DNA of 64,000 nucleotides from Schizochytrium sp. TIO01. Lineage: Eukaryota; Protista; Bigyra: Labyrinthulomycetes. The number at the start of each line of letters is the position of its first letter. The stretch's first letter is position 1. Both the position numbers and the translations under genes were made by a program. This document shows, in pieces, positions 32,425 through 45,933 of this stretch. The stretch lies in NCBI GenBank assembly GCA_004764695.1, contig SMSO01000025.1, positions 2,666,001-2,730,000 of the forward strand. The letters run 5' to 3'. The notes below the pieces were generated by a model. The model had not been told where the DNA came from. It saw only the letters and a list, made by a program, of their open reading frames with translations, and did no database searches.

Positions 32425-33033
32425 GACCGATGTGTCTTCACGAATCTGAGGAACCTCCGACTTGTCCCTTATCTCGGCCTTGGTCTTGATTCCTTTTCAC
32501 TATTCTTTAGCAGCCCACTGTCGTTGTGTACGTACTTCGAAGTGCGAGCAACGCGCGTCAGCACCTTGGTTTGAATTCTGCTGAGATGGGTTGATAGACT
32601 CGCAGTGATTTTGATTATTTATCAATCGTTTAGGCAAGAGGGACTAACTACCACACAAATGCACACCGGATACAAAATGGTTTATCCGGTCAAGTGTTAC
32701 CACAGCTCGAATTTGAAGAGACGATTGGATGAGAACAGCCATTTCGAGGACAGCTTTTGCAGCGAGAGAAAGCTTCTTGTCGTTGCCTTCTGTCAGCATG
32801 AGTTGAAGGTGATGAGGCTACAAATTAGCCTTAAACTGACCAGGATCTGGGTGGCTATCAACAAATTGCCCTATTCTATCAAATTTCTTGAACCTAAGCA
32901 AATCCACTATTGCCGCTGGTATTTGTGGCCGAAATAGTGTCGGAACCATTATGAATAGAGTGATTGGTAAGCAAGGGACAAAAACAGTAACCTGTATAAA
33001 ATCGTATGAAAGGCCAATATACATTTTATCACT

Positions 33034-36000
33034 TTATTCAATACCATCATAGCATGATAGTCCAAGCCGATTCTCGATAGAATCATCTGCACCATGACCA
33101 ATAAGAAGCTCGCCCAATCCTGATTCTTGAGATACATCGTAGCTGAATGCAAAATGCATTGCAGTGTTTCCTTGGCTGTTTTGATGATTGACATTTGCGC
33201 CACGCCGTAAGAGGAGTTCTGCAATCCTCTTATTCAAGTTCTGACAGGCTATAATGAGAGAGGTATTTCCATGCGAATCTGTCTCATTTGGATCAAAACC
33301 CATGTCTAACGCCTTCTCCACACGGTTATAACGTCCGTTACGAATTTGTGAGAACACGGTGTCGACCTCAGGTACGTCTTCACTAGATGCCTCCATGGCG
33401 CCGCCTCCGCCCTGCCGACTTTCTGCGACTTTGTTTTCCCATTCAACAGACCGTTTTTGTCTTTCCTCTCGCTCATTGAGAGGCCTGAGTTTATTCCTAG
33501 CAAAGTCCAACTTTTGCACATGGAGTGCATGGCGCATGCCTAGAATGTCACGCATATCTTCCACACGAAGCTCCATGAGGAATTCACCGTCAATACAAGC
33601 CTCTGCAAATGCATTTTTGTAGTACCCCAGGGACAGCGTGTCAAGCCAACGTCCAACATCTTGAACTGTCCAAAGCCTGACGTCGTCTGGAAAGGGCTCC
33701 TTAAGAAGCTTTGCTGCATCCTCGACCTCCTTTTGTCTACGGATTTGAGCCTGCTTCTCCTTGAGCTTTGCTTGGGCTGCCCCTGAAGAACCCAACTGAA
33801 TATTACCAACACTATCAATATTTGCTGCTTGTGCAGCTGCAGCTGCAGCCGCAGCAGTGTCTGCTGAAGAAGATATTGCTTGTTGCGTAGTATCTGAATT
33901 AATATCACGAAGGTTCTTGAGCATATTGATAGAGCTAAAGTACGATAGGGACATACTCATGAACTGGAATTTCAATAGCTCTTCAGTGCTTGCAAACATT
34001 TGCTTGCTACGCTCCTCATTTTCTTTGGCTGCTGCAGCAGTTGCAGCTGCTGCAGCTGCAGAGGTTGCTGTCGCAGACTCCAACTCGATACCCTTCTCCC
34101 GCAAACTATCGAGTTCAGCCTTTTGTTCCTCCAAAAGCTCCATGAGATTACGCTGCAATCTTTGAAACTCTCTTTCTTTGCGTTTTCTTGTGCTTTCCAT
34201 GTCTTCGATACCATGCTCTAGTGCCCGTAGTTCAGATTTCTTTGCCTCGACTTCTTGAAAAACTGCTGCAAACTCCGCTTCGAGTTCCTTCTTTTTGCGT
34301 TCACGTTCTGCGCGCTTAATGTGAATCTGCATTTCTAGAGCATATGACTCTGCTGCCCGTTTGCGAGCATCCTCGTCCAGCCCAGGGTCATACGAACTAC
34401 CTTTTCGTGCTCTTGCTTCACGCTCTGCAATCTCAGCTCGTGCATCAAAAAGAGCCTTTTCATGCGTCAGTTGATGCAAAGTTTCGTCGAGGTGGTCAAC
34501 ATCTCGAAGCTCTTGCTCTAGGACAGCCAACTCTCTCTCAGATTCTTGTAAGCCAGCATGAACCTGACTTACGCGAGTCTCGGCGCGCTCCTGGGCTCGA
34601 TGCAGTGCATCAATTTCTTCTTGCTGTGCGGAAAACGCAGCCTTGGAGTCTTCAATTAAAGTCAAGCCCAACTCAAGACGTTCAGGACCGGGCTCCGCAT
34701 TCTCCCAAGTTCGCTTGCGCTGAGCGCGACGACGGCCACGGACTCCACGGTACACGCGTTGAATCTGGAGTGCAGCAAGATTGAGAATGCGGTGATGCAA
34801 GAACTCCTCTCGACCTCTCCACATTCTCCATACGCTCTGAATTTTGGTTGCAGAATGGCCTTCGCGAATAATTCGAGCGCGCTCTGCACGCACATGAGCC
34901 AAGATGCGTTTGGCCAGATACATTCGGCACATGCTCTGGATTTTTGTAGCGGCGCGCTCCTGCTTCAGCACACGTACACGACCCCGACCGAGCATGCCTC
35001 TACCCACGCGCTGGATTTCAACTACAGCACGGGCCTCTTCACGATCTCGCATGGCTACAGCTCGTAATTCCTCTGCTCTTTCCCGGCCCATGCGGCCGCG
35101 TTGTAAGGCCTGAATACGTATAGCGGCTTGATATTTATCGTCATTTGCCATGCGCTCCTGCTTCATACGAATTACCTCCATACGCGCAGTGCGACCACGG
35201 AAAAGACGTTGAATCTCCAAAGCGCCGATTTCTCGCAATTCTTTCTCTCGGATCTTACGCAAAGCTTCTTCCTTTTCAGCACGTGCATCTTCTTCTGCCT
35301 CCATCTCACGTTGAATTTGGTCATATGCTTCTTGATCCAAGAGGTCAACACGCTCAACCTTTGGCAAAGCGGCCTCGGCATCTGCAATAGCGGCATCAAT
35401 TTTGGCAGCTGCAGTCTGTTCTTCAAGAACAGGTTGTTGCATCGAGCTATCAGTAGTGCTTTCGTCCAAGACCTTGGTCTCTGCTTGAAGAGCATCATTT
35501 ACTTTATTTTCTTCTGTTGCTTTTACTGATGCAGGTTTTACGTGCATAATATCTTTCTTTGGTGACCCAAGATTGTCTCCTGTTGATTGTCTTTTCGACG
35601 AATCCTTTTGAATTTCCGGTGCTTCCCTTGAGGCTCCTCTATCTGTTTTTTCTTCCATCTTACTTCGTGGCTGCATTGAGTATGTATCAGCACCACTTGC
35701 CACTCGTACCTGTTCTGCACTCTTTTCTCGAGATAACTGTCGTCCAAGAAGTTGCCGCTCAAGCTCCTCAATTTTACGACGATCTTCCTCTTCCCATTTT
35801 CGTCGACGCTCCTCCTGCTCGCGTTTGAGATGTTCGATTTGCCTTTGCACTTGCAATTCTAAATCAGATTGCATTATTGCTATCGGCGAGCAAAGGTCTG
35901 GATCACGTGGTTCTTGAACTTTCTGTATCACCACCTCCATGTCCATCCCACCATGCACGAGCTTGTTACGAATAGCCTGCTCTTTGGCCAACTGCTTTTC

Positions 36001-39000
36001 AAGGTTATCTGAAAGTTCTCGTGCGCGTGCACGCTCTGCTTCGACCTCAGCAAGCATTTCACGTTCTTTATCTTCTAGAAGCTGGCGCATGTTTTCTTCA
36101 TGTTGACGCCGGCGCTCATCAAGTTCCATTTCAAGATCATTTCGCGCTTCTTCGTCTCTGCGAGCAATCTCAAATTCTGCTAATTCTCGTTCTTGTCGCA
36201 ATCTCTCTTCTTCTTGGCGTGAAAGCTCCTCAAGCTCTGCTAGACGCACCCGGCGCGCCTCTTCAGCAAGGCGTTTGGTCTCGCGATGCCTACGCATGGC
36301 TTCCTCAAATTCAAGCTGAGCAACATCTGCGTCCTTTGACTGTTGCCTTGCTTGAGGACTTGTAACATTGTTGCTGACATGCTGAGGAATATCTTTGTCC
36401 ACTGACGTTGTTAGATCCTTTCGATGCCGTTTCTTTTTGCCTCTTTCAGTAAGATGAGATTCTATTTTGGATTCTTCATCTTCGTCACGACAAGTGCCAT
36501 CTTCCATAGGTCTACCACGGCGATGATGACTTTGCTGGTTCTGCTCTTGACGATACTTCTTAGACTGAGCCTGGCGTTTCAAAGAAGTTGTCTTGCTTAT
36601 CTCCTCGGCGCGCTTTGAAGCATGCAGCCCAGCTGCAAAGTTTTGCCCACCACTTTCCGCTGACAATGTAGCACTTGAAGACAATAGATTGTCCAAGAGG
36701 TCCAAGATATGTGCTTTCGATTCCTGACGTACCTCATGACCTGACTTTAGCCAAACAACAAATGCGCCATCGGGACGTTTCAAAGCTGTCTTCATTTGGT
36801 CGACTGCCTTGGGTCCTACCTTTCCAGAGTCCAGGAATTGGTGCGACCACAAATGAAATACTGTGCGACCATCGATGAAGGGATCAACATTCGTAGGGTT
36901 CACTAAAGCATTCTCTGTACTTTGTACTACAAGCAAGGGAATTTCAAGCTTTCGAAGATGCTGTCGAATGTCCTTGTGACGTAAAATTCCTTGACATAGA
37001 TGCGAGCGACCTTGTAGAGTAATGGGGTTGCCTACTGCGGTGTATATATTGAGAACCAATGCAGGATCTACACGCTGCAAATAATCATCCGAAAACAGAA
37101 ACCTAGAAAAATAAGAAATAGGCAAATCAGGCCGCATTGGTGGAAAGCTGTCGAAAATATTCACAGAGCTATGCAAAATTGCGGCTAACTGTTCATCGAT
37201 ATGAGCAAAGCCATTAACACTAACTAAGCCTCGAAGACACTTGCCATATTCAGGAAGACCGCCAAATTCGCTTGCAAAGTAGGCTGCAATATTCGCACCA
37301 TTGCCCAAACCAAGTAAGTAAAATGGGCGAAACGAGCAGCAAAAGTCACCCTTGTGCTCCAAGTCTGATAATAACTCATGCAAAGTAGCAGCGATGAACT
37401 CATTATTCAGAACGCCAGCTGTCTCTGCTGGAAACCGTGTGTATGCTTGCCCAGGATAGTTGAACACGAGGGCCTGAGATCCATAATATTTTCTCATGAG
37501 AGGCTCTAAGAAAATTTGCAGTGACTCACAGGTATCAAACATATCTTGAACCACGACAAGGTTTGGTGTTGAGCTTTCCAGTCCTCCAGTGCCTACAATA
37601 TCATAAGATAGAGTTGTCTTGCCATCTGAACATACAAAGGTTTTGGAAGACACTGTTTTTGCGCTTGATTCGAGGTCGAGATCTGATTGAGCATTAAACA
37701 GCTCTTGTCCTTGCCCGCCAGCATGCAGACGCTGCATTTGCTTCTCTTGTACTTTGCGGCGTGCACGAAGTTCCATTTTGCTCATTTTAGAGGATGCATT
37801 AGCGTCAGGTATTTGATCAAGTTTTTTTCGAAGGGCGTCTAAAGTCTCTTTATCGAATACTGTCTCCACATATGGAATTTGAGGAGTAGATTGAGCGAGT
37901 TTATTTCTCAGCATACTGTCATCTGATGTATGACGGTTGAAGCCAATGGCAGTTCCTGACATTGACTTATGTTGTACATAGCTCAAACCAGTAGGGGACA
38001 TGATTGGATCAGATGTCGAACCTTGCACAGATGAATGATTAAGGCGTGACAGCGAGAGAGCCAACGTTGGCCGTGTACTGTTCTCCTCGGCTGCTGCAAC
38101 AGCTGGGTCCTCACGTGTTGATTTTGAGTAGCTTGTGCGAGGACGGGTTCCTTTTCGCTGGCGTTTCCGTTGCTGTTCTAGCTTGTCATGCAAAGGCGCA
38201 ACATCTGCATCAGCACGTGCAATAGATTTTAAGTCTTCTTGAAGTTGCATAGTATTACGTAAGTAAGCTGGCAACTCAACAATGCATGACTCCTGGCCCT
38301 CTTTGGCAACCTTTTCAGGAGTTTGAGAATTACCTGCATTGGTGCCCGTATCATTTTGTCGTTGTTGCTCAGCTTCAATACGTTGCTTTTCCACATTTTC
38401 AGCAAGTGATCGGGTATGAGCATCAGCGGGGAGAAAAAGCAATGGATCACCCCTAGGATGCGCAGTGCCTGCTTTATACTTATGTGCCATGATTGCACCC
38501 AAGACAAATTCACAGAGAATTGCAGCTGCTTTGTTAATGTTCAAGAGACTTGATGGGCGAAAGAAGGGATCTTTAAGAAAACTTTCTAAGTCTGCGATGC
38601 GTTGCGGAGGTATACAATCCATGTCAAAGTCTCGCATCATAGAAGTAATCCGCTCTCCGTTAGCCATAATTGATTTTGTAGCATCCCAGGAAGTAGATTT
38701 TCCTGTAAGAAGTAACATCAGGGCATGAGCAACCTGGATCACTCCAAGAGGAGGCTTCTGAAAAGATCTTAATTCTGCCAAGCTAGCCTTTGTTAGAGCT
38801 TGTATTGCCTGTTCTGCTCGCTGTAATGCAAGCTGGCGCAGTTCTGAGAACGAGCTATCCATAAGCTTTTTACCTTCTGGAGTGAACGGGTTCACACGAC
38901 GATCGATGTAAATAGGTCCCACTTCGTGCCGATTTTTCTCTGCCGCTTTCGCTTCTTCTTTCAGGACTTGTTTTTCAAGTTGGCGTTCTGCTAACCTGGC

Positions 39001-40800
39001 TTGAACTTCCGCATGTTTGGGATCTAGTTTGTCAATAGCACGGTTCCGAGCGTGTTCAACAGTAGAATAAATTTTAAAACAGTTTGGGCACACCCGTACT
39101 TCTTTGTAATAGTGATTAGGGAAAGTGTATCCAAGACGACTCGACTCCAAGTCGGCGACTGACTGCACATAGTCTCCCTTTTCACCCTTTTCAAGCCTTC
39201 GGATCAGTAACTCAACTAGTTTCCGTTCATTTCGTGTTTGAACGATACTTCGGAACGTAACCGGATGTACCCTAGCTCCCCTTACGGTAGTGTTCGTACC
39301 TGGGGCTTCTTCCCCATCAACAAGAATTCCAGCGGAAGGGTCCTCAAGTAACATGCGACGTTGCAACATAGACTGTTCATTTGCATCCAGCTCGCCAAAA
39401 CCAATTTTAAATTCTACATCGCAAAAGTCGCCTGGGCATAATAGCGTTTGGCTTGAGTCAAGAGCTTTTCCATGGCTTGCCTCAAGCGTATTTCCTATGG
39501 TTTTGGCAAAATCTTGGCGATCAAAGCCCGCCATGCCTCTAAAGTATGAAGACTTTTCCCTTTTTAGATCCTCTCGATTAGCTTGTTCATTTTGCATCGC
39601 ACTTTCGATCTCCTGATCTTCCTCTATACCTGGCGATGCTTGAGATGCAAATTGCTGGGTAGCCTTTTGTGTGAATTTGTCTTTCACGGCTTCGCTGCGA
39701 CGAACCTCACGGCTGGTCATGTAAACTTTACGTTTTCCTGTTCGCAAAAGTGCCATATCTGCAATGTCAGTGAGTCCTGCAGACCCATCCAGACCAAGAT
39801 CCCTTAGAACTACTTTTTCTTCATTGGCGGATGCTTCCGTGTTTTTCAGTTCCGCTTCCTGTGCAAGGAGCTTTCTTTGCTCAAAATTAGAGGGGGGCTT
39901 AAAGTCAGTCGGAGTAGGTTCAAACACACCCCCAGCGCCACTGCCAGGTCTACTGCCTCCAGTTTCTTCTGTCACAGACATGTTTCGAATGCCAATAAGC
40001 CATAATCGATCATTTACATCCAGGAGAAACTCCGAGGAAACTGAGATTACGCGATACCTCGAGGTAGACTCTAGTGCACGAACAACTGCCCGAGATGCTG
40101 CATCCATTTGTCCATTGATGGCTCCGTTTCGGGAGCGAATCGCTTCACGTTGTGGTTTCCCATTGGCACCTAACGCAATCGGTGCGCCTAATCTGAAGGA
40201 GTGCATACAAGGTCTACCGTCGGGTTGAAGTAGAAAATCATGTCGAAAGTTAACAACCTCTAGATCTCCCCCCCCCTTGGTTGCCTCATGGTCATCTTGC
40301 AACAATCCTTCAAAATGAGTGTTTGTTTCTAAGACAGATGCTTTGGGTGTAATATATAGTTGTAAGCTGACAATTCTATCCGTCGTACGAGGTGTCTGAA
40401 GGTCTTCCACACTTAACACCCGGCGACTGCCATCTCGATAAAGCGCGACTGCAACATGCTGTGGTGCATTGTGACCTGCCCCAGAGCGGAACCGCTTGCG
40501 AATAACATCCATGACACATAAGTTACTTGGCCTGAGTGCAAGTGTGCCATCTAGAGTCTCAAAAGCCCACGATGTAGGTACATCATTCTCGAAAAGCACA
40601 GTTTCTGGTAAAGGTATACCTGACAATACACGTCCATTTTCTATCGCAGAGGTCCCATGTCGACGTAAAGTTCTGCAAAGGGTTTCAAGAAACCATCGCC
40701 AGTCTTTATCCTCTCGTGCTCCTTGTAAAGTTGCTACAGGTTCGACGTCTCGGACAATGTGTCTGGTGATGCCTGCGGAATCAATAGCTCCAATGTCCAT
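33034..40800 (-). CDS. 2588-aa multidomain protein: ATP-grasp-like N-terminus, dynein microtubule-binding domain, alpha/beta-hydrolase fold, 6 IQ motifs, coiled coils, SAM, ankyrin repeats
   Basis: MTBD-like ALTKASLAELRSFQKPP.GV..V..A...LL.....SW...K...F.P..L...NKAAAILCEFV.G (~38480-38830). Hydrolase-fold motifs VFNYPGQ, LLGLGNGANIA, IPLLVVQSTENALV, SGHEV (~36680-37640). Six IQxxxRG/M motifs (~34720-35230). SAM WTVQDVGRWL..L.L..Y...F....IDGEFL (~33490-33690). Ankyrin GNTSLIIAC...GANVNHQNSQGNTAMHFA. Confidence 0.92.
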   Translation of the reverse strand: MDIGAIDSAGITRHIVRDVEPVATLQGAREDKDWRWFLETLCRTLRRHGTSAIENGRVLSGIPLPETVLFENDVPTSWAFETLDGTLALRPSNLCVMDVIRKRFRSGAGHNAPQHVAVALYRDGSRRVLSVEDLQTPRTTDRIVSLQLYITPKASVLETNTHFEGLLQDDHEATKGGGDLEVVNFRHDFLLQPDGRPCMHSFRLGAPIALGANGKPQREAIRSRNGAINGQMDAASRAVVRALESTSRYRVISVSSEFLLDVNDRLWLIGIRNMSVTEETGGSRPGSGAGGVFEPTPTDFKPPSNFEQRKLLAQEAELKNTEASANEEKVVLRDLGLDGSAGLTDIADMALLRTGKRKVYMTSREVRRSEAVKDKFTQKATQQFASQASPGIEEDQEIESAMQNEQANREDLKREKSSYFRGMAGFDRQDFAKTIGNTLEASHGKALDSSQTLLCPGDFCDVEFKIGFGELDANEQSMLQRRMLLEDPSAGILVDGEEAPGTNTTVRGARVHPVTFRSIVQTRNERKLVELLIRRLEKGEKGDYVQSVADLESSRLGYTFPNHYYKEVRVCPNCFKIYSTVEHARNRAIDKLDPKHAEVQARLAERQLEKQVLKEEAKAAEKNRHEVGPIYIDRRVNPFTPEGKKLMDSSFSELRQLALQRAEQAIQALTKASLAELRSFQKPPLGVIQVAHALMLLLTGKSTSWDATKSIMANGERITSMMRDFDMDCIPPQRIADLESFLKDPFFRPSSLLNINKAAAILCEFVLGAIMAHKYKAGTAHPRGDPLLFLPADAHTRSLAENVEKQRIEAEQQRQNDTGTNAGNSQTPEKVAKEGQESCIVELPAYLRNTMQLQEDLKSIARADADVAPLHDKLEQQRKRQRKGTRPRTSYSKSTREDPAVAAAEENSTRPTLALSLSRLNHSSVQGSTSDPIMSPTGLSYVQHKSMSGTAIGFNRHTSDDSMLRNKLAQSTPQIPYVETVFDKETLDALRKKLDQIPDANASSKMSKMELRARRKVQEKQMQRLHAGGQGQELFNAQSDLDLESSAKTVSSKTFVCSDGKTTLSYDIVGTGGLESSTPNLVVVQDMFDTCESLQIFLEPLMRKYYGSQALVFNYPGQAYTRFPAETAGVLNNEFIAATLHELLSDLEHKGDFCCSFRPFYLLGLGNGANIAAYFASEFGGLPEYGKCLRGLVSVNGFAHIDEQLAAILHSSVNIFDSFPPMRPDLPISYFSRFLFSDDYLQRVDPALVLNIYTAVGNPITLQGRSHLCQGILRHKDIRQHLRKLEIPLLVVQSTENALVNPTNVDPFIDGRTVFHLWSHQFLDSGKVGPKAVDQMKTALKRPDGAFVVWLKSGHEVRQESKAHILDLLDNLLSSSATLSAESGGQNFAAGLHASKRAEEISKTTSLKRQAQSKKYRQEQNQQSHHRRGRPMEDGTCRDEDEESKIESHLTERGKKKRHRKDLTTSVDKDIPQHVSNNVTSPQARQQSKDADVAQLEFEEAMRRHRETKRLAEEARRVRLAELEELSRQEEERLRQERELAEFEIARRDEEARNDLEMELDERRRQHEENMRQLLEDKEREMLAEVEAERARARELSDNLEKQLAKEQAIRNKLVHGGMDMEVVIQKVQEPRDPDLCSPIAIMQSDLELQVQRQIEHLKREQEERRRKWEEEDRRKIEELERQLLGRQLSREKSAEQVRVASGADTYSMQPRSKMEEKTDRGASREAPEIQKDSSKRQSTGDNLGSPKKDIMHVKPASVKATEENKVNDALQAETKVLDESTTDSSMQQPVLEEQTAAAKIDAAIADAEAALPKVERVDLLDQEAYDQIQREMEAEEDARAEKEEALRKIREKELREIGALEIQRLFRGRTARMEVIRMKQERMANDDKYQAAIRIQALQRGRMGRERAEELRAVAMRDREEARAVVEIQRVGRGMLGRGRVRVLKQERAATKIQSMCRMYLAKRILAHVRAERARIIREGHSATKIQSVWRMWRGREEFLHHRILNLAALQIQRVYRGVRGRRRAQRKRTWENAEPGPERLELGLTLIEDSKAAFSAQQEEIDALHRAQERAETRVSQVHAGLQESERELAVLEQELRDVDHLDETLHQLTHEKALFDARAEIAEREARARKGSSYDPGLDEDARKRAAESYALEMQIHIKRAERERKKKELEAEFAAVFQEVEAKKSELRALEHGIEDMESTRKRKEREFQRLQRNLMELLEEQKAELDSLREKGIELESATATSAAAAAATAAAAKENEERSKQMFASTEELLKFQFMSMSLSYFSSINMLKNLRDINSDTTQQAISSSADTAAAAAAAAQAANIDSVGNIQLGSSGAAQAKLKEKQAQIRRQKEVEDAAKLLKEPFPDDVRLWTVQDVGRWLDTLSLGYYKNAFAEACIDGEFLMELRVEDMRDILGMRHALHVQKLDFARNKLRPLNEREERQKRSVEWENKVAESRQGGGGAMEASSEDVPEVDTVFSQIRNGRYNRVEKALDMGFDPNETDSHGNTSLIIACQNLNKRIAELLLRRGANVNHQNSQGNTAMHFAFSYDVSQESGLGELLIGHGADDSIENRLGLSCYDGIE

Positions 40801-42446
40801 GGTGCTCTTTAATCAAATTTGCGCCGCACTGAAGCGGCAGCTGATGTCCTTCGGCCCAGAAAAAGAAAGAACTTAGAATCTTGCTCAGGGTATAATCTAA
40901 AATGTATTGGGCAAAAAGGTTTTTGCAAATCTACCGCTGATGCTTGTTGAGAAAGCGGAAGCACGTTGCTTGCTCAAGAAAAGGCTGCAGAACACAACAA
41001 GCACAAACTAAATATGATTCGAATTATTTGTGATGGTCTTCCTCCACATGATCAGCTCAAAACCTTGCTGAATGACCTCGCGCGCCCTAGCTCGTCAACG
41101 GCGAGCTACAGGGCCGCAGGCTTTGTTACCAGACCCTGCGACCGCTATTTGTACAAAAATGAGTTAATCGTTCAATACTTCCTCTTCCTCTTCTTCTTCT
41201 TCTTTCTTGATCAGGCAAGCAAAGAGCCACAATTAAAAAATACAAAGGATGAGCTTAGAGATAAATTATTATGCTAACCCAACATGCACTTTGCTCATTA
41301 CTAATCCTACATGAATGCGCTTTATTGAGTAAAAATTGAGAACATCAATGTGGCCTCGTGTCTCCCTTGTACGTTCCTTGCACACCGTTACCAACATCTT
41401 CTGAATATAATGTTATTAAAACAATCAAAAATTTACTCTATGCATTTGCGTGCCCTCTATATTTAAACCTTTCGCATACAAGAGCGGAACAGCATTTCAT
41501 CTTGCCTTCGAACGCTTGGTTCGTAACGGATACTTTATCAGTCGCTCGCGCGCGAGAGGCCTTTCACCCCAATAGATAATGGCTAGTAGTGCGTATCATA
41601 TAAGACTTGTCCTATCAGTAATATCACAGAACAACTAATATTGTGTTGTTTGGTTTTATGAAATATGGTTTCGTCCATCAACAGCGTGCTGGCGTAAAAG
41701 AAATACACTCTTTTCACCGTGATCGTGAAAGCGAAGCGGCTCTTGTGATCGATGATAGCTAGAGAATCCATTGGTAAACTATAAACCACTATGCAAAGTA
41801 CCTGGAGTCAACTTTATGCTACCGGTGCTACCCACTAGCTTGTTTTCTCAAGTGGTGGCTTGCAATTAGGCTAATTATTTATTATTTGTTTGTCAGGCAT
41901 ATGTATGTCTTTTTATGTTGTGGAACGTCTTGGGAACTAGTATTAGCTACCTAGCCACCTAAACATATCCTGCGGGAGTTAAAAAAATGTGATTCTCGAG
42001 TTAAGTTCAAGTTAGGATCATCAAACCAAAGCAAAACTGGCGACCTTTGTGTCGAGAGTGAGGGTTTCACAGCTTGAACTGGGTACTACATATGAGTATT
42101 TCTTACATCATCGCAAGATGGCACTACTACATATACTTATTCATTTTTCGAGGCTTATGAAAGCTCAGAGTGGTTGGTATGAGTAGAATTCCTCGTTTGC
42201 CATCCTACGTACTACCTGTCATGTCAGATGATGATCGCACAGCCCTTTCACTGTAGTCAGTCAGCTGTAGAATACCTTCACTCGGGTTCTTGGCGTTTCA
42301 GATGTTATATGAAGTTCTGCGAAGGAGTTTTTCTTGTCCGTCGTGAGTCCTATTGCACGGTCCTCCTTCCATTTCATTATCCTCTTCCTCATAAGTACAA
42401 AGCGTTTTTGATGATCGTCGCATTCATATTTCTAGGCCTACTAAAA

Positions 42447-42498
42447 CTTATTTATTTTGATGATTTATTTTGATGATTTATTTTGATGATTTATTTTG
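42447..42498. repeat. 13-bp tandem repeat (TTTATTTTGATGA) x ~3.5
   Basis: Read directly; it ends in a TTTTGTAG acceptor-like site. Confidence 0.85.
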
Positions 42499-42812
42499 TA
42501 GGAGGTACCTTATCATCTATAGTTCGATGTGTGAAGAATTGTTTCCGTAGACATCATCATCGTCATCATTGCGCACATGCTCGCAATCAGTTTGGCATCA
42601 CACGACAAGTGGCGCGGTCTGCCTCGGCGCCTAGCTCTCTTCAAGTTGTCACAGCTCCAAATTCGTTCAAGGTTGGATGGAGCACTCGACTGCAGTAGTC
42701 CAAGATGTCGAATACACATCCAACTTACATGCACAAGTGCTTGCCAATGATAAGGCACTCAACTGAGTGGAAGCATCCTGCGTGCTTACATGAAAGGGAG
42801 GTGTGTCTTATG

Positions 42813-42813
<1 letters not shown>

Positions 42814-42904
<91 letters not shown>
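42814..42904. repeat. (GATT)~22 microsatellite
   Basis: Perfect run read directly. Confidence 0.97.
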
Positions 42905-43838
42905 GCAGGTAAGTTTATGTTGGCCAGTCATCGATCAAAATGGCGGCTTCCTCACAACAACTAAACTTGGAACGAGGTCAATTCGAGTACACAATAAGAA
43001 ACTTTATGTATGTATACATCCAATATAGGCCTATATATGTATTACCCTTTTTTTTTTTTTACTTTTTTTTTTAAATAAAAAATGATCAAGTTAAGTTAAG
43101 TTGCAAAATAAAATAATATTAAATAAAATAAAGCAGCAAATAATATATTGAATATTAAGAAGGCAAAGCAAAACTTTGCCTTTGTAACTTGTAAATGGGG
43201 CAGCAAATGACGCTATTGTCGCCAATGAAGGATTGGTTCTCTATCGGCAAACTTTGATGGGTGCTATGCTAGATACAATATTGGTGAACTTGAAGGTCGG
43301 CTTGCCTGTCAAAAAGAAGAGCTTTTCTTGTCGTGGCTCATCTTAGTTAACAATCATGGGGATATATCGTCGTCTGGATCCCAGGAACTAGGCATTTGAG
43401 ATCTGACTCGTGCCGTGATTGCTGACTTTCGTTCTCTTGAGAGAGCTTGCTCATGACCAGGCCGTGCGTGCTCTGTAGCAATTTGTGCGCGGGAATTCGA
43501 GTTTGTACTCAAGCTCAAGTGCAGACGAAATATAAAGCTAATCATCTCTTCGCTTTTGTTGCTGGCTTGCCTGCCTTCTTGTCCTTGTCAATGAAACTAC
43601 GCAAGCGACTTTAATTAGTTAATCAAAATCACAAATTGCAAGACCTACTCCACGATTCAGGACTCATGGTTCGCATTTATTGATTTGTGCGAATCGTTAA
43701 GTTCAACTTGAGCGCAATTGGAGACCCGAAGTTATTCATCCATGGGTTCGAGTTAGTTATTTTCGAGATACTCACGATGAAGGCTCTTGCATAATCATTA
43801 TTTCACAGACAGAATTATGATTGATTATTAAATTAAAT

Positions 43839-43842
<4 letters not shown>

Positions 43843-43888
<46 letters not shown>
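43843..43888. repeat. Poly(A) tract, 46 nt
   Basis: Homopolymer read directly. Confidence 0.95.
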
Positions 43889-43892
<4 letters not shown>

Positions 43893-45933
43893 CTTGAGTT
43901 TGCCATAGGTACTCTGCTTCTTGAGCCATCTCTTGCTCAGAATGAATGATGCATACAACGTTGCAGCTGGCCGAACAGCAGGCAAAGGACCCGGGCAAAA
44001 CATGATGGGTCGGGCCAGGTGGTTTGGGACTACTTCAGGCTTCGGGTTTGCCATCTATCCATCCCTCTTTGATTCATTCCTTGATTCCACTTTGCCACCG
44101 TGACGGCCTTCCCCAGAGGCGATGAACATTTCTTTCCTGCTGCTGCTAAAAGTAGGTAACTAACTCATTAACTCATTGCCATTTTCAATCAACCCAACTT
44201 CAGTGCGTCCGCCTTCAAGGCCTCCACCACTGCGAACACAGTCAGTCTCCAATCTCTCTCTTATCCTGGACATCCACGTTCTTCAGAATGAATGCACTGC
44301 GCTGCTGTGGTCCGTGCTCAGGTTGGATGTTGGCGTTAGTGCTTTTATAGGCGAGGTCAGGAGGTCTTTCTTAACAAGTTATGGACTTGAACAAATTATC
44401 ATGAACTTTATAGCTCAGCAAGAAGCTATGGACCTGTGTTGGTCGAATTAGAGGCCAAAGGAAACCTCAAAGGAGACCGAGGCTTCATTCCTCGCTAGCT
44501 TTAACTTCGTCCACCCAGTATCAGATCAGCTGTTCGCTACATTATTATTAATTGTATTCCTTTGTAAAATGTAAAATGCAGAATGTAAATTATGATGATC
44601 CCTGGAAGAAACACGCGCGCAAAGAATCCAAAAGGTTTCGAAGCTTCCTCTCGTCATCTTATAGGATCATCATCTCAAGCAAGCTCGAGTAAGAGCTTAG
44701 GTACCTGGGCATAAACCAGCTTCACTCCCATTTAGGAATTCACCGATTGTGAAGCACAACTCGATTCACCACTATCATAAGGTGCGATGCGTAAGATCGA
44801 TCAACGTGGCACAGCCAAATGACATTCAATAATTCGATCAAATGGCAGCCCTAATCCCTCGAGTGAGCTCTCGAGCGATCCTGAAACAAGGAGCTCCAGC
44901 CACTTAAACCTGAACCAAACGAAACCAGACAAACAAGAAAACAACCAAGAAAACAAACATACAAACAAGCTTTGCATTTTGCAACGAGTGAAGGCGTGAA
45001 CATGCAATCAAGCTGTACCTAGCTAGGCACCGCTGATGGGTTCAATTCGCTTGCGAACTGGCTGAAAAGAAGACAACTCAGAGTTCGTTTCGAGGCCTTT
45101 GATTCTCCTTTCTTAATAGAAATTGAAGTAAAGAAGAAATAGTTCTGCTATTGGGTTACTTTTATTTTACTCTTTGCAAGCTTCTCTTTAGGTGGAGGAT
45201 GATGATGTCAAAGAGAGAAAGTGTCAGAAAACTGACTAAATAAACCAACCCACGCGCTTTCAAAGTTCTTTTGCACAGCATAACAACTAATCGAGTGTTC
45301 ACACTCTTATGCTTCTTCTGTATCTCTCTCTCACACAAAGTAGTTTCTTTTTCCTGCACGACGCAATGTGTATTTAGTTTGTACCTACTACTACAAGTTG
45401 TCGCTTGCTTTGCGCTGGGATAGATGAGATTGATTATCATCGCATGAGTAGGTTTATACCAAGGTAGGCAGGGACCCGTTTTACGATGTGATAATAAACC
45501 TGAGGAGTGCGCGAAGCTGCGCATTTCGCATTGTTGTTCAAGCAAACAAAGAAGGCGTCTGGAAAGTGAAAACTAAAAGGTTTTCTTTTCTATTGTTGAA
45601 AAAAAAATTGCAAAAAAAAATATTTATGATGATCGTGGAAAATAGAAATAAAAAAATGGGAATGAAAAAAAAAAGATGGGAAGAAGAAGAAAGAGGAAAC
45701 AACCAATGACAATCAATAATCATCGAGCGATCGATTGACGGCGCTCAAGGACGCACGGGCGATCGATCCTGCGGCGCGCGGCAGCGGGCGAACGAGCGCT
45801 TGCGTCTGTTCGCTCTGCGCAAAGGTTCCCTGCTTGCGTGTTGTGTGCGCTTCTTTCGTGTGCGTGGTTTAGGCTATATCGAACTAGCTAGGACTCCTCC
45901 CGGCGCGATATTCATCGCGATCTCCTTCTACCC

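What the first reader, a model, noticed from the sequence alone, without database searches (positions are those of the whole stretch)
33034..40800. Motor-less dynein microtubule-binding domain fused to a pseudo-hydrolase, six IQ motifs, SAM and ankyrin repeats
Seen: one 2588-aa ORF contains a ~120-aa segment (~38480-38830) with the signature of the dynein heavy-chain stalk-tip MTBD (L.K..L.ELRSF.KPP..V..V..A...L...SW...K; F.P......KAA..LC.FV). No AAA+ ring or Walker motifs are evident. Downstream come an alpha/beta-hydrolase fold, coiled coils, six IQ motifs, a SAM domain and ankyrin repeats. Known: the MTBD normally sits in the AAA4 stalk and its affinity is switched by coiled-coil registry; IQ motifs bind calmodulin or centrin; SAM domains can polymerise. 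Inference: a microtubule-anchored, Ca2+/calmodulin-regulated sensor or scaffold, plausibly in the zoospore flagellum or root system. I know of no characterised protein with this architecture.
Basis: partly seen in the sequence, partly recalled or inferred. Interest (0 to 1): 0.85.

Follow-up and report, generated by a model that had tools for sequence, protein, structure and literature searches.

The report
Motor-less dynein microtubule-binding scaffold protein
A flagellated stramenopile encodes a 2,588-residue protein, conserved across stramenopiles and never studied, that carries the microtubule-gripping tip of a dynein motor without the motor, joined to a domain resembling a trypanosome outer-dynein-arm docking subunit, a dead hydrolase, six IQ motifs, SAM and ankyrin repeats.

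Summary
Window 33034-40800 (minus strand) is one uninterrupted 2,588-aa ORF under purifying selection. Residues 650-779 are a genuine dynein microtubule-binding domain (MTBD):
- Pfam MT scores 55 bits.
- It matches solved dynein chains at E 4e-15.
- The AlphaFold2 model superposes on the mouse dynein MTBD at Z 17.2, 1.8 Å over 129 residues.

There are no AAA+ modules or Walker A motif. Only about 2.5 heptads of stalk remain before the MTBD and less after it. The α/β-hydrolase fold is real (Z 28) with an invariant Gly at the nucleophile position. Six IQ motifs, SAM and ankyrin repeats are confirmed.

New here:
- An N-terminal ATP-grasp-fold domain resembles trypanosomatid outer-dynein-arm docking subunit DC4 (Z 18.2, against 10 or less for other ATP-grasp proteins).
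- There is an invariant Cys4 module and a very conserved C-terminal coiled-coil module with no known relatives.
- The domain order is kept in every major stramenopile lineage sampled.
- Motor-less MTBDs also occur elsewhere, including proteins with 2-6 tandem copies.

No paper on this architecture was found. The most likely function is a static, calmodulin-decorated microtubule scaffold, possibly axonemal. That function is inferred, not shown.

The parts
33034..40800 (-). Whole ORF, 2588 aa, intron-less, one gene
   Evidence: One public contig of 8321 nt covers about 33022-41342, and no joints were seen in 4 runs. Of 35 strain differences, 25 are synonymous and 27 fall at third codon positions. 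Orthologues are full-length.
39955..40725 (-). aa 26-282: ATP-grasp-fold domain, closest to trypanosomatid ODA docking-complex subunit DC4; probably non-catalytic
   Evidence: pLDDT is mostly 85-97. VIA: 9e78_5K (dDC4) Z 18.2, rmsd 3.6 Å over 214 aa; 9e5c_7c Z 16.7; the next ATP-grasp proteins score Z 10 or less. Chain identity rests on PMC7617938. The domain is present in 26/45 orthologues with no conserved catalytic residues.
38926..39438 (-). aa 455-625: Cys4 module (CPGDFC ... about 110 aa ... VCPNC) followed by a 53-residue helix; predicted zinc knuckle
   Evidence: C571 and C574 are invariant. C455, G457, D458 and C460 are at least 90% conserved. R523, E525, P561, Y578 and R585 are invariant. 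pLDDT is 80-90, with a helix at 572-624. There is a weak eS27 zinc-ribbon resemblance, E 0.4.
38464..38853 (-). aa 650-779: dynein-type MTBD (H1-H6) with an 18-residue CC1 stub and a CC2 stub of about 12 residues
   Evidence: Only positions 89-207 of the 344-position Pfam stalk model are matched, whereas the genome's dyneins match 2-341. K671 and K709 are conserved.
38440..38460 (-). aa 781-787 HPRGDPL: conserved motif that ends the CC2 stub
   Evidence: Alignment of 18 orthologues, consensus G.xH.R.D(P)L.
36652..37605 (-). aa 1066-1383: alpha/beta-hydrolase fold lacking the serine nucleophile (G1164-L-G1166-N-G); His1355 is kept (SGHE), and the acid is probably E1296 (QSTEN)
   Evidence: Model pLDDT 87. 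Foldseek E 6e-13. VIA Z 28.4. G106, G108 and H295 of the fragment are invariant in 49 sequences. No GxSxG motif.
35701..36303 (-). aa 1500-1700: highly charged coiled-coil-like spacer (50-55% E/K/R/Q)
   Evidence: Composition. Poorly conserved in sequence among orthologues.
34732..35214 (-). aa 1863-2023: six IQ motifs spaced 25-33 residues apart
   Evidence: Pfam IQ 41.9 bits against a cut-off of 20.3. Regex hits. Conserved in orthologues.
33811..34692 (-). aa 2037-2330: the best-conserved part of the family. Coiled coils plus two Ala-rich helices and the motifs PGPERLxLGL, IDALHRAQERAE, KRAEREKK and KFQFMSMSLSYFSS. No known relatives.
   Evidence: 48-89% identity across orthologues, about 55-60% in most. 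No Pfam, PDB or Atlas match.
33508..33675 (-). aa 2376-2431: SAM domain
   Evidence: Pfam SAM_1, E 1.6e-11.
33085..33345 (-). aa 2486-2572: three ankyrin repeats
   Evidence: Pfam Ank_2, Ank_4 and Ank.

Best explanation
This is a real single gene. It is the local member of an uncharacterised, stramenopile-wide family of giant non-motor microtubule-associated scaffold proteins.

Shown:
- The domain order is fixed: DC4-like ATP-grasp-fold domain, Cys4 module, stalk-less dynein MTBD, nucleophile-less alpha/beta-hydrolase, charged spacer, six IQ motifs, a very conserved coiled-coil/Ala-rich module, SAM, three ankyrin repeats.
- The MTBD has the dynein fold.

Inferred:
- The MTBD holds the protein on the tubulin lattice at the dynein footprint. 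With only about 2.5 heptads of CC1 and less of CC2 and no AAA ring, no nucleotide-driven registry shift can release it, so it acts as a static anchor rather than a stepping foot.
- The IQ array carries calmodulin- or centrin-type light chains and makes the scaffold Ca2+-responsive.
- The dead hydrolase, the SAM-ankyrin end and the conserved coiled-coil module are binding or oligomerisation surfaces.
- The N-terminal domain resembles the subunit that sits on the DC1/DC2 coiled coil of the trypanosomatid outer-arm docking complex. The likeliest site is therefore the axoneme or flagellar apparatus of the zoospore.

My odds: binds microtubules about 0.7; flagellar or axonemal about 0.45.
For: Single gene under selection.

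MTBD by sequence and fold.

No motor and a truncated stalk.

Basic residues at the positions of mouse K3299 and R3337, which PMC6629372 places next to tubulin acidic residues, are kept in 39/45 and 42/45 orthologues.

Complex prediction with the genome's own alpha/beta-tubulin: score 0.58 against a best control of 0.00, verdict 'weak support'. That mark was reached by 51 of 78 solved complexes and 2 of 108 mismatched pairs, but scores of 0.60 or under are weak and may reflect memory of solved dynein-tubulin complexes.

N-terminal domain matches dDC4 at Z 18.2, and dDC4 is a doublet-microtubule protein.

The genome has 18 full-length dynein-stalk matches; all four loci examined carry dynein AAA modules.

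The architecture is conserved in Labyrinthulomycetes, oomycetes, brown algae, xanthophytes, chrysophytes, bolidophytes and pelagophytes.

IQ, SAM and Ank by Pfam.
Against: There is no experimental or expression evidence. No run is on record as RNA.

The DC4 likeness is structural only: 17% identity, no sequence-level hit, and the N-terminal domain is the least conserved part.

The Phytophthora MTBDs have drifted to about 25% identity, below the Pfam threshold, so microtubule binding may not be essential everywhere.

The family is present in Aureococcus, which has no known flagellate stage. However, PMC5100056 reports axonemal-type dynein heavy chains in Pelagophyceae and includes Aureococcus among its species.

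The complex score is in the weak band.
Confidence: 0.5

Rival explanations
1. The same kind of static microtubule scaffold, but cytoplasmic: cortical, spindle or organelle-positioning microtubules, with no special link to the flagellum.
For: The MTBD binds generic alpha/beta-tubulin lattice, and cytoplasmic dynein MTBDs fit the model as well as axonemal ones. The family occurs in Aureococcus. The N-terminal DC4-like domain is weakly conserved. The same genome has another motor-less MTBD-like protein with a p25-alpha domain, a general tubulin-binding module.
Against: The best sequence matches to the MTBD are axonemal inner- and outer-arm dyneins. The best structural match to the N-terminal domain is an axonemal docking subunit. 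Among records that name a source organism, the family was seen in stramenopiles plus one Symbiodinium record; lineages without flagella were not checked.
Confidence: 0.25
2. The MTBD-derived fold has been put to another use and no longer binds microtubules. The protein would then be a calmodulin/SAM/ankyrin signalling scaffold for another partner.
For: The Phytophthora copies are about 25% identical and fall below the Pfam threshold. No stalk or motor context is left. Complex support is weak.
Against: The two tubulin-facing basic positions are conserved in at least 39/45 sequences, oomycetes included. The fold is kept at 1.6-1.8 Å rmsd. Controls in the complex test scored 0.00.
Confidence: 0.15
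3. It is an enzyme that acts on microtubules: either the ATP-grasp domain acts like a tubulin ligase, or the hydrolase domain works with another nucleophile. The MTBD would deliver it to its substrate.
For: TTL and TTLL ligases share the ATP-grasp fold and match the N-terminal domain at Z 7.5-8.1. The hydrolase keeps its His and a probable acid.
Against: No residue of aa 1-300 is invariant, and the ATP-grasp Mg/ATP positions are not conserved. TTL and TTLL score no better than unrelated ATP-grasp enzymes. There is no Pfam TTL hit. The nucleophile position is Gly in all 49 sequences.
Confidence: 0.05
4. A gene-model artefact: several neighbouring genes that happen to read through as one ORF.
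For: Long disordered linkers separate the domains. Direct RNA proof is lacking.
Against: There are 7767 nt without a stop. Third-position bias of strain differences runs along the region examined. One 8.3-kb contig matches the ORF's limits. The same order is found in about 78 orthologue clusters, including UniRef A0A7S3MBB9 of Spumella elongata (2125 aa), which carries MT, IQ, SAM and Ank on one chain.
Confidence: 0.03

Closest known systems
Dynein heavy-chain stalk tip (MTBD; Pfam MT PF12777; structures 3err, 8i3j, 2rr7, 6rza/6rzb)
   Same: Six-helix MTBD fold at 1.6-1.8 Å rmsd, about 20-25% identity. The sequence signature is kept, as are basic residues at the positions of mouse K3299 and R3337. 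The best sequence hits are axonemal dyneins.
   Different: There is no AAA+ ring, linker or tail. Only positions 89-207 of the 344-position stalk model are present, so CC1 and CC2 are stubs and cannot relay ATP-driven registry changes. There is no H2-H3 flap. It sits inside an unrelated multidomain protein.
[quoted passage not shown]
   Same: The same ATP-grasp-derived fold (Z 18.2 and 16.7), well above all other ATP-grasp proteins (Z 10 or less). Similar size, about 260 residues. Neither has a reported catalytic role.
   Different: Identity is 17% with no detectable sequence homology. DC4 is a stand-alone protein of about 280-340 aa described as trypanosomatid-specific. Here the domain is the N-terminus of a 2588-aa protein. 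Binding to DC1/DC2 was not tested.
Catalytically inactive alpha/beta-hydrolase-fold proteins (pseudo-hydrolases used as binding modules)
   Same: A canonical fold with cap (Z 28.4 to small esterases such as MGS-M2, XhpG and RutD), with the nucleophile replaced.
   Different: The His and a probable acid are retained. It is not an NDRG member: there is no Pfam Ndr hit and no NDRG structure among the top 50 matches. The ligand or partner is unknown.
IQ-motif lever arms (myosins, ASPM, IQ-bearing axonemal proteins)
   Same: Six consecutive IQ motifs on a predicted helix, four of them matching IQxxxRGxxxR.
   Different: Spacing is 25-33 residues rather than the myosin 23-25. There is no motor head. 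The light chains are unidentified.
Tandem-MTBD proteins of diverse protists (e.g. P0107, P0108, P0109, P0113; Mantamonas plastica P0146)
   Same: Motor-less proteins built from the dynein MTBD fold alone.
   Different: They carry 2-6 MTBD units in a row (period about 150-170 aa) and no other Pfam domain. None of the nine scanned has the IQ, SAM or Ank parts. Each unit is no closer to this MTBD than real dyneins are.

Membership tests
Dynein heavy chain | Ring of six AAA+ modules (AAA_6/7/8/9, Dynein_heavy, Dynein_C) | tested here: not met
   No AAA or dynein-motor Pfam family was hit on the whole protein or on six fragments. There is no Walker A motif. Genuine dyneins of the same genome show all of them.
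Dynein heavy chain | Full antiparallel stalk (CC1 and CC2 of about 100 residues each) | tested here: not met
   Only Pfam MT positions 89-207 of 344 are matched, whereas the genome's dyneins match 2-341. In the model, CC1 is the helix 651-668 and H6+CC2 is the helix 757-777.
Dynein MTBD domain (Pfam MT PF12777, tip part) | Score above the gathering threshold and the six-helix fold | tested here: met
   49.5 and 55.4 bits against a cut-off of 24. Z 17.2 at 1.8 Å to 3err_B and Z 16.9 at 1.6 Å to 8i3j_A.
Dynein MTBD domain | Binds the alpha/beta-tubulin lattice | tested here: inconclusive
   Complex prediction scored 0.58 against 0.00 for the best control, verdict 'weak support', and may rest on memory of solved complexes. 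Basic residues at the K3299 and R3337 positions are conserved.
Alpha/beta-hydrolase fold | Eight-stranded alpha/beta fold with a nucleophile elbow | tested here: met
   pLDDT 87. Z 28.4, rmsd 2.2 Å over 258 aa to 4q3l_A. Foldseek E 6e-13.
Alpha/beta-hydrolase (active enzyme) | Ser/Cys/Asp nucleophile in Sm-x-Nu-x-Sm | tested here: not met
   The elbow reads G-L-G-N-G, with Gly at the nucleophile position invariant in 49 sequences. His1355 is invariant.
NDRG (Pfam Ndr) | Sequence or closest-fold membership | tested here: not met
   No Ndr hit at E up to 10. No NDRG structure among the 50 best by Foldseek or by VIA.
ATP-grasp superfamily | ATP-grasp fold | tested here: met
   aa 19-287 match synapsin, Ddl, PurK, RimK, TTL/TTLL and others at Z 7-10.
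ATP-grasp superfamily (active ligase) / TTL-TTLL | Conserved ATP/Mg-binding residues; TTL signature | tested here: not met
   No invariant residue in aa 1-300 among 45 sequences. The E/N after the FxxD strand is not kept. No Pfam TTL hit. TTL and TTLL score Z 7.5-8.1, no better than unrelated ATP-grasp enzymes.
ODA docking-complex subunit DC4 | DC4 fold | tested here: met
   9e78_5K: Z 18.2, 3.6 Å over 214 aa. 9e5c_7c: Z 16.7. Chain 5K was identified as dDC4 because 266 residues are built (11-276) and it is the only ATP-grasp-like protein in the paper.
ODA docking-complex subunit DC4 | Sequence homology; binding to the DC1/DC2 coiled coil and the ODA alpha heavy chain | tested here: not met
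   No sequence hit to PDB chains or to stand-alone proteins. Binding is not testable with these tools. I therefore call it 'DC4-like', not a DC4 orthologue.
IQ calmodulin-binding motif | IQ consensus above the Pfam threshold; light-chain binding | tested here: met
   41.9 bits against 20.3. Six motifs found, four of them strict. Calmodulin or centrin binding itself was not tested.
SAM_1 and ankyrin repeats | Pfam thresholds | tested here: met
   SAM_1 44.8 bits against 23; Ank_2 37.9 against 27.3; Ank_4 38.7 against 22.7.

The most novel reading that the evidence does not exclude
The dynein MTBD is a mobile microtubule-binding module that protists have reused many times outside motors. It appears singly in at least three giant proteins of this genome and as arrays of 2-6 copies in other lineages. 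On this reading, the family studied here is a stramenopile axonemal component. It would couple a DC4-type outer-arm docking module to a permanently engaged MTBD and a calmodulin-loaded IQ arm. That could cross-link doublets, or occupy dynein's own binding site, in a Ca2+-dependent way to shape the heterokont flagellar beat.
Probability: 0.2. Interest if true: 0.85.

Novelty: new variant of a known kind. Interest (0 to 1): 0.7.

Why it matters
The MTBD has been treated as part of the dynein motor, with its affinity set by the stalk. A conserved family that keeps the MTBD and discards the stalk and the motor, together with many proteins made of tandem MTBDs, would show that it also works as a free-standing microtubule-binding module. 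That would offer a natural registry-free MTBD for biophysics.

DC4 was described as trypanosomatid-specific. A DC4-like fold at the head of a stramenopile protein suggests an older or convergent module.

The family also gives an untested candidate for Ca2+ control of zoospore flagella in oomycete pathogens, brown algae and thraustochytrids.

Tried and rejected
- NDRG-like pseudo-hydrolase (my own idea, from the GxGxG elbow). Rejected: no Pfam Ndr hit, and no NDRG among the top 50 structural matches.
- TTL-like N-terminus (my own idea, from 'FLLDVNDRLWL'). The fold is ATP-grasp, but TTL and TTLL score no better than unrelated enzymes and no catalytic residues are conserved.
- Protein sub-range references are not accepted. 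I worked around this by aligning window fragments with whole orthologues.
- ESM Atlas on aa 1-300 gave only unnamed ciliate clusters, and on aa 2055-2365 nothing useful.
- Sequence searches found nothing for the hydrolase against the PDB, the N-terminus against the PDB, the N-terminus against stand-alone proteins or the coiled-coil module against the PDB.
- RNA evidence: no run is recorded as RNA. The contigs are compatible with one transcript but do not prove it.
- Complex prediction of the MTBD with tubulin gave weak support only, 0.58 against 0.00.
- Looked for the 'motor-less full stalk in a TRAF/ankyrin protein' noted earlier in this genome. The loci I checked with short open frames (C30, C31, C34) are ordinary dyneins split by introns or frameshifts, so that note was not located.
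- Toxoplasma 9ya2_L (probably the ICMAP2 globular domain) matches the MTBD at only Z 9.1, which is within the noise for helical folds. Its paper does not call it dynein-like.
Full report
**Observation.** The window holds one ORF on the minus strand, 33034-40800, of 2588 codons. It starts at the first ATG after an in-frame stop.

Pfam on the whole protein and on six fragments gives these hits:
- MT (PF12777, 'microtubule-binding stalk of dynein motor') at aa 657-769, 49.5 and 55.4 bits against a cut-off of 24.
- IQ.
- SAM_1 at aa 2376-2431.
- Ankyrin repeats at aa 2486-2572.

No AAA or dynein-motor family is hit. A pattern scan finds no Walker A and no GxSxG motif. The same scan finds six IQ motifs at aa 1863, 1896, 1929, 1954, 1987 and 2013.

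**Is it one gene?**
- The ORF runs 7.8 kb without a stop in a genome of about 45% G+C.
- Four public assemblies laid on 33000-38999 show no joints. One contig of 8321 nt runs from about 540 nt upstream of the ATG to 12 nt past the stop codon. None of the runs is recorded as RNA, so this is compatible with a single transcript but does not prove one.
- Of 35 single-letter differences between strains, 25 are synonymous and 27 lie at third codon positions of this frame. The only length difference is an in-frame 3-nt insertion.
- About 78 orthologue clusters have the same domain order. They include a full-length 2669-aa protein of the thraustochytrid Hondaea fermentalgiana (63% identity) and UniRef A0A7S3MBB9 of Spumella elongata, a 2125-aa protein that carries MT, IQ, SAM and Ank on one chain.

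**The MTBD.**
- phmmer of aa 620-850 against all PDB chains finds only dynein heavy chains. Axonemal ones come first: Chlamydomonas 8glv_Fm at E 3.8e-15, DNAH6 at about 3e-12.
- An AlphaFold2 model of aa 1-800, built on 45 aligned sequences, gives pLDDT 91-97 for aa 640-780.
- VIA-align against 48,161 representative chains superposes aa 650-779 on three dynein structures. These are mouse cytoplasmic dynein MTBD 3err_B (Z 17.2, rmsd 1.8 Å, 129 aa), human inner-arm dynein d 8i3j_A (Z 16.9, 1.6 Å, 128 aa) and dynein-c 2rr7 (Z 13.9).
- The Pfam match covers only positions 89-207 of the 344-position stalk model. The genome's own dyneins match positions 2-341.
- In the model, CC1 is one 18-residue helix (651-668) and H6 plus CC2 is one 21-residue helix (757-777). 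It ends in a family-conserved G.xH.R.DPL motif.
- The stalk that transmits registry changes in dynein is therefore essentially absent.
- The superposition on 3err is almost gapless (130 residues against 130), which gives an offset of +2628 to mouse numbering. By that offset, K671 corresponds to mouse K3299 and K709 to R3337. Lacey et al. (PMC6629372) place these two residues next to tubulin D427 and D163.
- Position 671 is K in 38/45 orthologues (plus one R) and position 709 is K or R in 42/45, oomycetes included.
- A complex prediction used this genome's alpha-tubulin (L009), beta-tubulin (L005) and aa 648-781. It scored 0.58, 0.58 and 0.53 against 0.00 for all three controls, with partner pLDDT 81 and at least 93% contact agreement between runs. 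The tool's verdict is 'weak support'. It warns that scores of 0.60 or under are often wrong and that solved dynein-tubulin complexes may be remembered.

**Other parts.**

1. *N-terminal domain.* Residues 26-282 fold with high confidence into an ATP-grasp-type domain.
   - Its best matches by far are chain 5K of the Leishmania tarentolae doublet-microtubule structure 9e78 (Z 18.2, 3.6 Å, 214 aa) and chain 7c of the T. brucei structure 9e5c (Z 16.7).
   - Ordinary ATP-grasp proteins reach Z 10 or less: synapsin, Ddl, PurK, RimK, TTL and TTLL6/7/11.
   - The Leishmania paper describes a single ATP-grasp-like protein, dDC4 (LtaP31.0090). [quoted passage not shown] Its built residues 11-276 equal the 266 residues of chain 5K.
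   - The likeness is structural only. Sequence searches find nothing.
   - The domain is present in 26 of 45 orthologues, Phytophthora included, but has no invariant residue. The Mg/ATP positions of ATP-grasp enzymes are not kept.

2. *Cys4 module.* A Cys4 pattern (C455-x4-C460 ... C571-x2-C574) is invariant or nearly so, together with R523, E525, P561, Y578 and R585. A 53-residue helix follows it. The second knuckle faintly resembles the eS27 zinc ribbon, E 0.4. Its fold could not be searched on its own.

3. *Hydrolase.* Residues 1066-1383 are a canonical alpha/beta-hydrolase.
   - The model has pLDDT 87. Foldseek gives E 6e-13. VIA gives Z 28.4, 2.2 Å over 258 aa to esterase MGS-M2.
   - The nucleophile elbow reads G-L-G-N-G, with Gly invariant in 49 sequences.
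   - His1355 is invariant, and an acid (E1296; D in one orthologue) stands where expected.
   - This agrees with the separate first-stage note on the missing nucleophile.

4. *C-terminal coiled-coil module.* Residues 2037-2330 are the best-conserved stretch of the family, about 55-60% identical in most orthologues and up to 89% in the closest. They contain coiled coils, two conserved Ala-rich helices and the motif KFQFMSMSLSYFSS. There is no relative in Pfam, the PDB or the Atlas.

**Distribution.** Named members come from these groups:
- Labyrinthulomycetes: Hondaea.
- Oomycetes: many Phytophthora, Pythium, Nothophytophthora.
- Brown algae: Ectocarpus, Choristocarpus, Hapterophycus.
- Xanthophytes: Heterococcus.
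- Chrysophytes: Spumella.
- Bolidophytes: Triparma.
- Pelagophytes: CCMP2097, Chrysophaeum, Aureococcus.
- One MMETSP record (MMETSP1066; organism name cut off at 'Coscin', probably the centric diatom Coscinodiscus).
- One record labelled Symbiodinium.

In Phytophthora the MTBD is only about 25% identical and falls below the Pfam threshold. Aureococcus has no known flagellate stage. Kollmar (PMC5100056) reports axonemal-type dynein heavy chains in Pelagophyceae and lists Aureococcus among its species, so Aureococcus is not a clean negative control.

The window's genome (64 Mb, 37 contigs) has 18 full-length dynein-stalk matches. The four loci I opened carry complete dynein AAA modules. The organism therefore has many dynein heavy chains, consistent with a flagellated stage.

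**Motor-less MTBDs elsewhere.**
- An exhaustive HMMER search of 1.84 billion representative proteins with aa 636-790 gave 1028 hits at E up to 0.001. Most of the best 150 are far too short to be dyneins. Of 144 examined, 56 contain two to six MTBD-like units in tandem, with a period of about 150-170 aa.
- Pfam sees only MT in them.
- Sources include an MMETSP transcript marked complete (P0113), Tara metatranscriptomes, long eukaryotic contigs and Mantamonas plastica.
- Per unit, they are no closer to this MTBD than real dyneins are.
- In this genome, two further non-dynein ORFs carry MTBD-like segments. One is a 1340-aa ORF (L003:820-4842, MT 26.8 bits). The other is a 2321-aa ORF with p25-alpha, IQ, WW and TPR (L004:154-7119, MT 21 bits, below cut-off). 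The latter was also noted by a first-stage reader.
- Paper searches for motor-less or MTBD-like domains, for this architecture and for orthologue identifiers found nothing relevant.

**Interpretation.** Fold, domain order and conservation are shown. Function is inferred.

The most economical reading is a static microtubule-associated scaffold:
- The MTBD anchors the protein at the dynein footprint without any means of ATP-driven release.
- The IQ array recruits calmodulin- or centrin-type light chains.
- The dead hydrolase, the SAM-ankyrin end and the conserved coiled-coil module bind partners or drive oligomerisation.

Four observations tilt the site towards the zoospore axoneme or flagellar apparatus. 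They do not establish it:
- the DC4-like head;
- the axonemal flavour of the best MTBD hits;
- the genome's large dynein repertoire;
- the absence, so far, of members from lineages known to lack axonemal genes (this was not tested systematically).

I put 0.5 on the whole statement: about 0.7 for microtubule binding and about 0.45 for a flagellar location. The rivals are:
- a non-flagellar MAP (0.25);
- a repurposed MTBD fold that no longer binds microtubules (0.15);
- an enzyme delivered to microtubules (0.05);
- a gene-model artefact (0.03).

**Novelty.** The modules are known. The combination is not described in the papers searched, nor is a conserved, stalk-less, motor-less dynein MTBD. The same holds for a DC4-like fold outside trypanosomatids and for the tandem-MTBD proteins. 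I class this as a new variant of a known kind, a microtubule-associated protein built around a borrowed dynein module, of fairly high interest. All the evidence is computational.

**Limits.**
- Expression could not be shown.
- The collections do not allow a rigorous presence/absence profile across eukaryote genomes.

Noticed in passing
Proteins P0107, P0108, P0109, P0111, P0113, P0115, P0146 and about 50 more: There is a large set of non-dynein proteins of about 400-1300 aa made of 2-6 tandem dynein-MTBD-like units (period about 150-170 aa). Pfam sees only MT in the nine scanned. They occur in marine metagenomes and metatranscriptomes, an MMETSP transcript and Mantamonas plastica. I found no paper describing them.
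   Followed up: partly
L003:820-4842 (+) = G000:C34:2640819-2644841: A 1340-aa ORF of the same genome whose only Pfam hit is an MTBD-only match to PF12777 (26.8 bits, aa 537-627). It is another motor-less MTBD candidate.
   Followed up: partly
L004:154-7119 (-) = G000:C33:1531153-1538118: A 2321-aa ORF of the same genome with a sub-threshold MTBD-like segment (21 bits, aa 469-581) plus p25-alpha (TPPP), IQ, WW and TPR. A first-stage reader noted the same ORF (s1-833237).
   Followed up: partly
PDB 9ya2 chain L against model aa 653-778: A microtubule-bound globular domain on the Toxoplasma intraconoidal microtubule (residues 1207-1457, probably ICMAP2) aligns with the MTBD at Z 9.1, 3.0 Å over 121 aa. 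This is within the noise for helical folds, and its paper does not call it dynein-like. Treat it as a lead only.
   Followed up: partly
window 40801-45933: About 5 kb upstream of the gene has no ORF of 130 aa or more and a lower G+C (0.39-0.44). One public contig that covers the whole ORF extends about 540 nt into it, which could be a long 5' UTR.
   Followed up: no
window 38368: One strain assembly (X1) has an in-frame TCA insertion here. A near-identical 2589-aa protein (P0001), against 2588 aa in the window, may be the same variant. The site is in the linker after the MTBD.
   Followed up: partly
window 34043-34061 and 35142-35159: Two 18-19-nt stretches inside the Ala-rich and charged coding repeats also match a much deeper, unrelated contig in all four runs. 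They look like shared low-complexity codon repeats, not a mobile element.
   Followed up: no
P0298: A record labelled Symbiodinium microadriaticum carries the conserved C-terminal module and SAM at 54% identity. This could be contamination by a stramenopile or a genuine dinoflagellate copy.
   Followed up: no
P0031-P0050, P0066, P0067, P0074 (Phytophthora and relatives): The oomycete orthologues keep the whole architecture, but their MTBD has drifted to 22-30% identity and no longer reaches the Pfam threshold. A basic residue (K) at the R3337-equivalent position is still present in the two oomycete sequences shown.
   Followed up: partly
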